Made by a program: the position numbers and the translations under genes. A DNA stretch of 63,799 nt, the filler included, from Reticulomyxa filosa (lineage: Eukaryota; Protista; Foraminifera), in assembly GCA_000512085.1 (NCBI GenBank). It is 14 parts of 14 records of this genome, joined end to end, with 100 filler letters (N's around TTAATTAATTAA, not from the genome) between each part and the next. Parts side by side here need not be neighbours in the genome. Positions count along the whole stretch, not along the records: positions 48,357 to 50,896 come from ASPP01028855.1; 13 more parts are not named here. The stretch is one strand, 5' to 3'. Position 1 is the stretch's first letter, and the number at the start of each line of letters is the position of its first letter. Below the pieces are notes generated by a model. The model worked only from the letters and a program-made list of their open reading frames with translations. It searched no databases and was not told the origin of the DNA. Of the stretch, positions 48,257 through 50,896 are shown piece after piece.

Positions 48257-48437
48257 NNNNNNNNNNNNNNNNNNNNNNNNNNNNNNNNNNNNNNNNNNNN
48301 TTAATTAATTAANNNNNNNNNNNNNNNNNNNNNNNNNNNNNNNNNNNNNNNNNNNNTTTGCCAAAATATATGAGTTGATTGTGGAAGAATATATCGTAAA
48401 AATCTAAAGTATTTCAAAGTTTCTCAACATTATTAAC

Positions 48438-50896
48438 ATGGGTAACCAAACCACAACTCCCTTTCAACTGTTGAAGACATTGCCAACTCCACTTAAAGAT
48501 CCTCAATGTGTGGTACACAAATACGAAATCCTCATTTGTGGAGGTTTCAGTCAAAGAGCTTGTTATTCTTATCATACACTCAAAAACGAATACAAGTTTA
48601 TCTGTCAGTACCCAAATAATGTTAAATTATTAGGTGGACACTATGTAGTGAAACTGGTAGATAATGACAACAACAAAGACAGCAATCAAATCACTTTGTT
48701 GTCTTTTGATGGAAATGGAATGACAAAAAAACATACATTGGTGATGAAATATAGAAGTGTTTGGGATAATGATAACGACAATAAGTCAAAAATATCAAAC
48801 AAATACAATCAATGGCTTCCTTTCACAGACAATAACAATCGTCCAATTATCATTGCAAGAGATCATAATTATTCTGCAGCGCGTGCATTGATTGGTGGAA
48901 GAAACAATAATTTGTTATTTATCACTTATTCTCCAAAGAATATTAGTGTGTTTGATTTAAATACATTTCAATTTATTAAACATGATACTTTACCAACCAA
49001 TGATCGTACATATTGTCATTGCTTTGTATCAAAATCAGAAAATAGACAAGTACAAGAACAAGAAATGATGAAAACAAATCAAAAAAATAAACAAAATTAT
49101 CAAATGCTGTTGTTTAAATATAATACAGGATTATCAATTGAATATGATGAAGATAACAATACTTTTCAATTTCGGAAACTACCTGTTTGTAAGGATATTG
49201 CATTATTATATGAATGTGCATATGTGTGTACCAATGATGTCATCTTGTTCTTTGGTGGACATGATTTGAAAAATCATATTTATTCAAGATCAGTGCACAA
49301 GTATTCAATTGGAGAAAACAAATGGACGACATTTCAAAACACTTTACCCAGAGGATTAAAGGAGTGTGCTGCAATATTGAGTGAAGACAAAACATATGTG
49401 CATATTATTGGAGGATGTAATGGTGGAGACGTTGTGTCAACACACATGAAAAAAGAAGTGAGTCAATGGCTGAGTAAAAAAGAAATGAAAAAAGGAAAAA
49501 AATTGAAGATAGAAGAAGAAGAAGAAGAAGAAGAAGAAGAAGAAAAAGAGGAAGAAATGAAGGAAGTAAAATATGAAGAAAAGAAAGTAAAGATAGATAT
49601 CGATGTTAAGTATTATTTTAAATTATATTGAATGACAATTGATTTGTAAGTATACAAATGAAAATAGGAAAAAGAAGAAAAGAAAAAATGGATGAAATGG
49701 TGGAAAGAAAGAAATGAAAACGACAAAGCAGAAATGATCGAAAAATTTGAACAATTATCGAGTAATGATTTTGGAGCGTGGATATTAAATCAAAGTAAAT
49801 GGAAAAATGATTTAAACGATGAAAATATATCTGGAGTTTATGTCGCAATTGAAAATTACATTAATTATCATTCCACTGATGTTTTGTTTTGTTTTTTTTT
49901 TATATTAAATTTATATTAAAACAAAAAAAAATATATATATAAGTTGTTTGATACATAGAACAACGATGAGAAAAAAGATAATGAAATCAATCAGGTTACC
50001 TTTGTTTCTGTTTTTTTTTTCCAATTATTGTCCTTTGAAAATATAGTAATAATAAAAAAATATTAAAATAATAAAAGACAGCAGTATTTGTGCAAGTAAA
50101 TGATAAGAAAGTATCAATATATTTAAAAGAGTTGACATTAAACGAGCTATTTCGTCAATGTTGTTATTGTTTAGATAAAAAAGATTTTACAAAGTTGTCA
50201 AAAATGAAAATGGATGTTGCTGATATGAATGACAATATAATTGAATCAGATGAAGATGTAATGAAAGTGTTAGAATTAAAAGATCCAACATTTAAATTAA
50301 TTTGGACTCATTCAGGAGAAAAAATAAAAATAAAAAATGCATTAGTTATGATGATTGCGATAAGTGAATACAACGAAGGATTGGAATGGAAAAGTCTTAA
50401 AAATGTAAAAGACAAAGATATTGCAAATTTCAAAAAATTATTTGAAGAAGAATTAAAGTATGATTTTGTATGTAATGATACACCAAATATGACACAAGAA
50501 GATGTAAAAGATTATATTGAATCAACCATACTAAGTAAGAGATTAAGAAAAAATATAAACAAATATGATGGTTTGATTATAATTATTTGTGGACATGGTA
50601 ATGATGAAAACGTATTAGTAACAAGTGAAGGTAAAACAGTATCAATTGATAAAATTCATGTAACTTTTGATAGCCATGAAATGCCATCATTAAAAGACTG
50701 TCCTAAAATATTTATTATTGATGCTTGTCGTGGTCGAAGTGCACCTCATGCAGTTGAAATAAGAGGTTTAGAGAGTAATGCAAAACCACAGAAATTATAT
50801 TGTCATAATGATGACGGATTTTTAACTATTTGGTCAACCACAAAAGGTCATGTTGTCGCTGATTATTCACTACTAAGTGAAACAATGAAAGATGTT
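48438..50896 (+). CDS. Kelch propeller - acidic linker - helical domain - PB1-like module - caspase-family (peptidase C14) protease; exons 48438-49604, 49668-49880, 49959-49994, 50078->50896; 3'-truncated
   Basis: Kelch motifs ILICGG, LIGG, ILFFGG...VHKYSIGENKW, HIIGG. Three phase-0 GT-AG introns keep one frame. Catalytic dyad IIICGHG (His 50594-50596) and PKIFIIDACRG (Cys 50726-50728), plus NALVMMIAISEY and DGFLTIWSTTKGH strands. Confidence 0.88.

What the first reader, a model, noticed from the sequence alone, without database searches (positions are those of the whole stretch)
48438..50896. Kelch propeller fused through a PB1-like module to a caspase-family protease
Seen: three separate ORFs plus a 36-nt micro-exon splice in one frame via three phase-0 GT-AG introns. 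The product is Kelch propeller / poly-Glu linker / ~70-aa Trp-rich helical domain / ~80-aa beta-grasp-like module / C14 protease with intact His-Gly and DACRG dyad. Known: PSLxxxPKIFII-x-ACRG resembles animal caspases, but Asp replaces the Gln of QACRG, Leu sits where caspases have the S1 Arg, and there is no SWR Arg. That pattern fits Arg/Lys-cutting paracaspases such as MALT1. Inference: a single-chain sensor-adaptor-protease, possibly for immunity or cell death. I recall caspase-like genes being noted in Reticulomyxa, but I do not know this architecture as described.
Basis: partly seen in the sequence, partly recalled or inferred. Interest (0 to 1): 0.85.

Follow-up and report, generated by a model that had tools for sequence, protein, structure and literature searches.

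The report
Foraminiferan Kelch-linked caspase-fold protease family
This is one gene of a large family in a giant single-celled amoeba, in which a propeller-shaped binding module is joined to a caspase-shaped protease whose pocket predicts cutting after arginine or lysine rather than aspartate, so the proteins now cited as 'caspases outside animals' are probably not true caspases.

Summary
Confirmed as a gene model; splicing was not shown by reads. All close relatives are Reticulomyxa filosa proteins. Four exons (389, 71, 12 and over 273 aa, cut by the piece edge) join through three phase-0 GT-AG introns whose positions recur in paralogs. Four public R. filosa models, one uninterrupted JGI ORF and two Bolivina proteins also carry Kelch and C14 in one chain. 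The protease has an intact His-Cys dyad and, in a paralog's model, the caspase fold (Z 21-23 to caspases, 18 to MALT1, 12-16 to metacaspases). None of 111 non-animal domains has Arg or Gln at the three caspase S1 positions. Leu, Asp and mostly Asp stand there, plus an Asp matching MALT1 Asp365, and a conserved Arg/Lys-Gly sits in the cleavage linker. So it is most likely Arg/Lys-specific and dimer-activated. The adjacent module is beta-grasp, PB1/CIDE-N-like; canonical PB1 motifs are not met. The protease family (32 or more copies) is known in the literature as 'caspase-like'. I found no paper on its architecture, specificity, or exchange of modules with a Kelch family of 344 or more members. 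An immune or cell-death role is unshown.

The parts
48438..49604 (+). Exon 1 (389 aa): divergent Kelch-type beta-propeller (about residues 5-345) plus charged linker; starts Met-Gly with Thr at position 6 (possible myristoylation, inference)
   Evidence: 344 relatives, the 120 listed all R. filosa, best about 60-69% identical
49512..49544 (+). Run of 11 Glu in the acidic/basic linker
   Evidence: sequence
49605..49667 (+). Intron 1, GT..AG, phase 0, 63 nt
   Evidence: same position in L004, L005, L007, L008, L009
49668..49880 (+). Exon 2 (71 aa): Trp-rich helical domain without family assignment; absent from some paralogs, doubled in others
   Evidence: no convincing match
49881..49958 (+). 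Intron 2, GT..AG, phase 0, 78 nt
49959..49994 (+). Micro-exon 3 (12 aa), charged linker
   Evidence: identical in L011; similar micro-exons in L001, L005, L008
49995..50077 (+). Intron 3, GT..AG, phase 0, 83 nt
50078..50305 (+). Beta-grasp module, PB1/CIDE-N-like (exon 4 residues 1-76)
   Evidence: paralog models, pLDDT about 90; best matches PB1 domains, Z 8-9, rmsd 2.1-3.0 over 71-77 residues
50324..50896 (+). C14 caspase-fold protease domain, cut by the piece edge about 50 residues before its end
50396..50419 (+). Loop 1 / helix 1: Leu107 at the caspase S1 Arg position, Asp114 matching MALT1 Asp365 (inferred from position)
50594..50596 (+). Catalytic His173
50720..50728 (+). Asp215 (caspase Gln; MALT1 Asp462) and catalytic Cys217
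50762..50767 (+). Arg229-Gly230, conserved basic site in the inter-subunit linker; candidate self-cleavage site
   Evidence: 67 of 93 linkers hold Arg/Lys-Gly, 23 expected after shuffling
50861..50863 (+). Asp262 at the caspase S-W-R Arg position (MALT1 Glu500)

Best explanation
One multi-exon gene of Reticulomyxa filosa encodes a cytoplasmic zymogen: Kelch propeller, charged linker, small helical domain, PB1/CIDE-N-like beta-grasp module and a caspase-fold protease that cuts after Arg/Lys. Shown here: exon structure by comparison, domain folds (from paralog models), intact dyad, acidic S1 residues, family size, and single-chain relatives. Inferred: the propeller binds a trigger or scaffold and clusters the chains, helped by the beta-grasp and helical modules. 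The six-stranded protease then dimerises and becomes active, as initiator caspases and MALT1 do, trims itself at the conserved Arg-Gly in the linker, and cleaves cellular targets. The front module is exchangeable (Kelch, TPR, TRAF finger, HSP70), so the family acts as a set of signal-switched proteases. The biological output (defence, stress, cytoskeletal remodelling, death) is unknown.
For: Splice model conserved in paralogs. Kelch lies directly upstream of C14 in 6 fetched loci; gaps between the split annotations are only 52-144 nt. Single-chain models RFI_21820, RFI_03392, RFI_12165, RFI_22965, an uninterrupted 731-aa ORF in a JGI contig and two Bolivina argentea proteins. Caspase fold. S1 columns over 111 domains: no Arg at either Arg position, no Gln, Asp in 102; MALT1 determinants from PMC4357240. 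Linker Arg/Lys-Gly. Purifying selection on the protease against its closest paralogs, dN/dS 0.21-0.26. Activation of six-stranded C14 enzymes by dimerisation (PMC4357240).
Against: No reads for this locus. The structures are predictions for paralogs P0002 and P0010, not for this gene. The third acidic position is less conserved (Asp 57, Glu 4 of 88 filled). The beta-grasp module lacks the strand-1 Lys and the D-x-D/E-x-D/E core, and its Z scores are only about 1 above other ubiquitin-like folds. The Kelch-C14 proteins of the JGI contig and Bolivina show no match to the beta-grasp or helical profiles, so these modules are not required. Several paralogs are broken.
Confidence: 0.6

Rival explanations
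1. Same single chain and Arg/Lys specificity, but the propeller is a substrate-recruiting module rather than an activation sensor: it brings a chosen protein to the protease, as sister Kelch genes may bring targets to a ubiquitin ligase through their short C-terminal tail.
For: 59 of 120 listed Kelch paralogs end in a conserved 38-residue helical tail instead of the protease; fusion-type and tail-type propellers are interleaved in the tree. Kelch propellers as ligase substrate receptors is established knowledge (KLHL and F-box-Kelch families).
Against: The tail matched nothing in Pfam, PDB or the Atlas, so its ligase role is only a resemblance. A six-stranded C14 domain still needs dimerisation.
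Confidence: 0.2
2. Two separate neighbouring genes: a Kelch gene ending at the stop at 49631 and a protease gene starting at Met 49692, as public annotation splits several paralogs.
For: Split annotation in L003, L004, L005, L009; some protease paralogs have no Kelch just upstream (L002); no reads.
Against: Only 60 nt lie between stop and start; conserved phase-0 donors and acceptors at that junction; uninterrupted Kelch-C14 ORF elsewhere; single-chain models.
Confidence: 0.07
3. A true Asp-cutting caspase, as the literature labels the R. filosa proteins.
For: Best sequence and structure matches are animal caspases; PMC5982838 groups them with animal caspases.
Against: All three residues that make the basic S1 pocket (PMC4357240) are absent here and across the family; the conserved linker site is Arg/Lys-Gly.
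Confidence: 0.04
4. A decaying copy from a birth-and-death family, with no present function.
For: Stops, frameshifts or lost catalytic residues in several paralogs (L007, L003, L004, P0106; 16 of 111 domains lack the dyad); Kelch dN/dS up to 0.76; the 3' end is missing from the piece.
Against: This copy has four open exons, intact splice sites and dyad, and protease dN/dS 0.26 against an 87%-identical paralog. Some paralog breaks lie in homopolymer runs and may be sequencing errors (inference).
Confidence: 0.09

Closest known systems
R. filosa caspase-like proteins (Klim et al. 2018, PMC5982838; used as outgroup in PMC10959488 and PMC11463336)
   Same: Same C14 protein group in the same organism; branches with animal caspases in their trees.
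   Different: Those papers rest on trees and BLAST; my term search of PMC5982838 found no treatment of specificity or Kelch. Here the S1 pocket predicts Arg/Lys and the architecture is resolved.
Animal initiator caspases (caspase-8, -9, Dronc; MEROPS C14A)
   Same: Caspase-type fold, K-x-F-I-I-x-A-C-R-G motif, linker after the catalytic Cys, N-terminal recruitment modules; best structural matches (Z 21-23).
   Different: No Arg/Gln/Arg S1 pocket; no CARD or DED found; Kelch, helical and beta-grasp modules instead; Arg/Lys-Gly in the linker.
Paracaspase MALT1 (C14B)
   Same: Caspase-type fold with acidic residues at the positions of Asp365, Asp462 and Glu500; predicted basic P1; dimer activation expected.
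   Different: No death or Ig domains found; structurally further than caspases (Z 18.2 against 21-23); no tree with MALT1 could be built.
Metacaspases (Yca1, TbMCA2, AtMC4)
   Same: Acidic S1, Arg/Lys specificity, non-animal distribution.
   Different: Lower structural match (Z 12-16); the model's length and element order fit the caspase type without the two extra strands.
PB1 and CIDE-N domains
   Same: Beta-grasp fold, acidic stretch in the second half.
   Different: No Pfam match; strand-1 Lys and canonical OPCA core missing; not reported next to a caspase domain in the PB1 survey read.

Membership tests
Peptidase family C14 | PF00656 above cut-off and His-Cys dyad | tested here: met
   66.4 bits against 21.4; His173, Cys217
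Peptidase family C14 | Caspase-hemoglobinase fold | tested here: met
   Model of paralog P0002 (75% identical over the domain): Foldseek E 2e-12, Z up to 23
Caspases (C14A) | S1 pocket Arg, Gln, Arg | tested here: not met
   Leu (or Lys in a pairwise alignment), Asp, Asp; no Arg or Gln in 111 family domains
Caspases (C14A) | Cleavage after Asp | not testable with these tools
   needs an assay
Caspases (C14A) | Caspase-type sheet without the metacaspase insertion | tested here: met
Paracaspases (MALT1 type) | Acidic residues at the Asp365, Asp462, Glu500 positions | tested here: met
   Asp114, Asp215, Asp262; mapped through the caspase-3 alignment and PMC4357240, not by direct alignment to MALT1
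Paracaspases (MALT1 type) | Death domain and Ig domains around the protease | tested here: not met
   none in Pfam or fold searches; paralogs end just after the protease
Paracaspases (MALT1 type) | One clade with MALT1 | not testable with these tools
   no MALT1 sequence could be fetched by reference
Metacaspases | Eight-stranded monomeric sheet with two extra strands | tested here: not met
   Z 12-16 against 21-23 for caspases; element list of the model
PB1 domain | Beta-grasp fold of 80-100 residues | tested here: met
PB1 domain | Lys in strand 1 or D-x-D/E-x-D/E core | tested here: not met
   strand 1 has no Lys (a Lys at the start of strand 2 in 14 of 18); Asp49 and Ser57-Asp58 are conserved but the core reads D-M-N-D-N; no Pfam PB1 hit
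Kelch-repeat propeller | Kelch motif match and repeated Gly-Gly blades | tested here: met
   PF01344 30.4 against 20.1 bits; six Gly-Gly-type motifs; the propeller itself was not folded here
SAM domain (considered for exon 2) | Profile or fold match | tested here: inconclusive
   no profile match; fold searches were filled by the beta-grasp part, and exon 2 was not folded alone

The most novel reading that the evidence does not exclude
Foraminifera have independently built a large, exon-shuffled receptor-protease system: a pool of hundreds of Kelch propellers (and TPR, TRAF, HSP70 or kinase modules) is coupled to an Arg/Lys-cutting enzyme on the caspase scaffold and acts as a one-chain inflammasome-like defence or damage switch. 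The enzyme would be the closest known non-animal relative of caspases that still has the acidic pocket, bracketing the origin of Asp specificity.
Probability: 0.25. Interest if true: 0.8.

Novelty: new variant of a known kind. Interest (0 to 1): 0.58.

Why it matters
The Reticulomyxa proteins are the main published evidence that caspases existed in the last eukaryotic common ancestor (PMC5982838, PMC10565124) and serve as outgroup in animal caspase trees. If their pocket is acidic they are not caspases by the defining biochemical property (Asp specificity, PMC11121540), and they become a test system for how Asp specificity arose: one peptide assay decides it. The family is also large and modular across foraminifera, which points to an undescribed protease signalling system in an ecologically major group.

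Tried and rejected
No prokaryotic, viral or plasmid relative was found (narrow patterns, so weak evidence; searches failed for lack of conserved stretches). Exon 2 as SAM: no support. Sister tail as F-box or SOCS box: no support; my first count of that tail used a faulty pattern and was redone. Positive selection on the Kelch exon: not seen, pairwise dN/dS 0.25-0.76. The clade test was badly posed and is not used; the fairer test (p-AU 0.04, quick tree, group chosen after seeing the tree) only weakly suggests separate origins of the Bolivina fusions. Paper searches for Reticulomyxa plus Kelch, and for Kelch plus PB1 plus C14, gave nothing; the library lacks most subscription journals. The origin of JGI sample 3300030740 could not be confirmed.

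Full report
Source and observation. The piece (48357-50896, AT-rich) holds one gene model on the + strand. All 32 relatives of exon 4 and all 120 listed relatives of exon 1 are Reticulomyxa filosa proteins, so the piece is almost certainly from that foraminiferan. The four exons are open and in phase, and the three introns are GT..AG, phase 0, 63-83 nt, 12-18% GC, with stops in all frames. Exon 1 matches Kelch motifs and exon 4 Peptidase_C14. The gene is cut by the piece edge about 50 residues before the end seen in paralogs.

One gene or two. An open splice path proves little, as each junction has 6-9 in-frame alternatives. Comparative evidence decides it. In six paralogous loci a Kelch exon lies just upstream of the protease. 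Where public annotation splits them, the gap is 52-144 nt, against mostly 300 nt or more between other neighbours. Phase-0 introns with GTT donors lie at the same positions in L005, L008, L009, L004, L001 and L006. The micro-exon is identical in protein in the 87%-identical paralog L011. Four GenBank models already join Kelch, helical domain and C14 (RFI_21820, RFI_03392, RFI_12165, RFI_22965), though these are predictions too. Independent of splicing, a JGI contig encodes Kelch plus C14 as one uninterrupted 731-codon frame, and two Bolivina argentea proteins do so as well (transcript-derived by my recollection only).

The protease. A model of paralog P0002 (pLDDT 82) has the caspase fold. Z scores are 21-23 to caspases and cFLIP, 18.2 to MALT1, and 12-16 to metacaspases. 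His173 and Cys217 are intact. Caspase P1 specificity rests on Arg, Gln and Arg, and MALT1 uses Asp365, Asp462 and Glu500 in similar positions (PMC4357240). The family profile aligned to caspase-3 puts Leu on the first Arg, Asp on the Gln and Asp on the S-W-R Arg. In this gene these are Leu107, Asp215 and Asp262, with Asp114 on helix 1. A pairwise alignment places Lys108 on the first Arg because the Reticulomyxa loop is one residue longer, but that column is variable while the Leu is nearly fixed. Over 111 non-animal domains the columns read Leu 101 and Ile 6; Asp 102 and Asn 6; and Asp 57, Asn 8, Ala 7, Glu 4 of 88 filled, with no Arg or Gln at the caspase positions. The linker after the Cys holds Arg/Lys-Gly in 67 of 93 domains against 23 expected, where caspases have their Asp cleavage site. 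Together these predict cleavage after Arg/Lys and self-trimming; neither is assayed.

The middle modules. The first 76 residues of exon 4 fold as a beta-grasp domain. PB1 domains rank first (Z 8-9), with ubiquitin-like and CIDE-N domains within about 1 Z. The canonical PB1 Lys and OPCA core are not present, so I call it PB1/CIDE-N-like. Exon 2 is a four-helix Trp-rich unit with no assignment. It can be absent (L008), doubled (P0154, P0215) or attached to other fronts.

The family. R. filosa has at least 32 such proteases and 344 related Kelch proteins; about half of the listed Kelch proteins end in a short conserved tail instead. The same back end follows TPR repeats, a TRAF finger or HSP70 in R. 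filosa models. In Bolivina, Nonionella and unnamed assemblies the protease follows MATH-SAM, kinase, GGACT or peptidoglycan-binding domains. In a quick tree rooted on animal caspases, the non-animal domains form one side (98) and all R. filosa domains lie in one group (98) with a few unnamed ones. MALT1 and metacaspases were not available, so this says nothing on which is sister to caspases. Modules appear to be exchanged: against L005 and L009 the Kelch exon has dS 0.33 but the protease 1.12 and 0.97, and fusion-type propellers need 7 changes on the Kelch tree. All introns being phase 0 would allow this (inference). Selection is purifying on the protease (dN/dS 0.21-0.26 against its closest paralogs). 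It is weaker on the propeller in close pairs (0.68-0.76) but never above 1, so diversifying selection is not shown.

Mechanism. Initiator caspases and MALT1 are switched on by dimerisation through recruitment domains (PMC4357240). The most likely reading (0.6) is a cytoplasmic zymogen whose propeller binds a trigger or scaffold, clusters, dimerises the protease and cleaves targets after Arg/Lys; no hydrophobic segment suggests secretion. Rivals are a substrate-recruiting propeller (0.2), a decaying copy (0.09), two genes (0.07) and a true caspase (0.04). The steps from binding to output are inferred.

Known and new. Klim et al. 2018 reported R. filosa caspase-like proteins from trees and BLAST and used them to place caspases in the eukaryotic ancestor; later papers use one as outgroup. 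My term searches found no discussion of their pocket or of Kelch fusions, in a library that lacks most subscription journals. It is a C14 peptidase; it fails the membership tests for caspases (pocket), MALT1-type paracaspases (architecture) and metacaspases (fold), and it works most like a paracaspase with a caspase-like scaffold. Verdict: new variant of a known kind, interest 0.58.

Noticed in passing
P0050:372-412 and relatives (alignment A6): 59 of 120 listed R. filosa Kelch paralogs end in a highly conserved 38-residue Trp-containing helical tail, also found before WD40 repeats (P0143, P0148). F-box or SOCS-box-like by eye only; no Pfam or PDB match.
   Followed up: partly
P0231 (ETO35864.1): R. 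filosa model in which an HSP70 domain is followed by the exon-2 helical domain and the beta-grasp module; a chaperone front on the same back end, if the model is right.
   Followed up: no
P0159, P0173, P0261, P0272, P0222, P0235: Same protease behind TPR repeats, a TRAF finger, MATH-SAM (Nonionella), a kinase, GGACT (Bolivina) and a peptidoglycan-binding domain.
   Followed up: partly
L009:10721-15218; L001:2228-3337; L004:6981-9359: Neighbours of paralogs include a 1795-aa NACHT plus HEAT gene, a TPR gene and a WD40 gene; may be chance in a genome rich in such families.
   Followed up: no
L007:3699-5952; L003:4402-6644; L004:5325-6151; L008:2960-3724: Broken paralogs: stops and frameshifts (some in homopolymer runs, possibly sequencing errors) or loss of the catalytic His; 16 of 111 domains lack the dyad and could be cFLIP-like regulators.
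   Followed up: partly
P0191, P0209, P0214, P0266, P0284: Proteins with two or three C14 domains in tandem, which could dimerise within one chain.
   Followed up: no
window 48438-48455: N-terminus Met-Gly with Thr at position 6 fits a myristoylation signal; 33 of 120 Kelch paralogs start Met-Gly.
   Followed up: no
L005:3-389; L002:2949-3179: Further Kelch fragments lie near the paralogous loci, suggesting local duplication.
   Followed up: no
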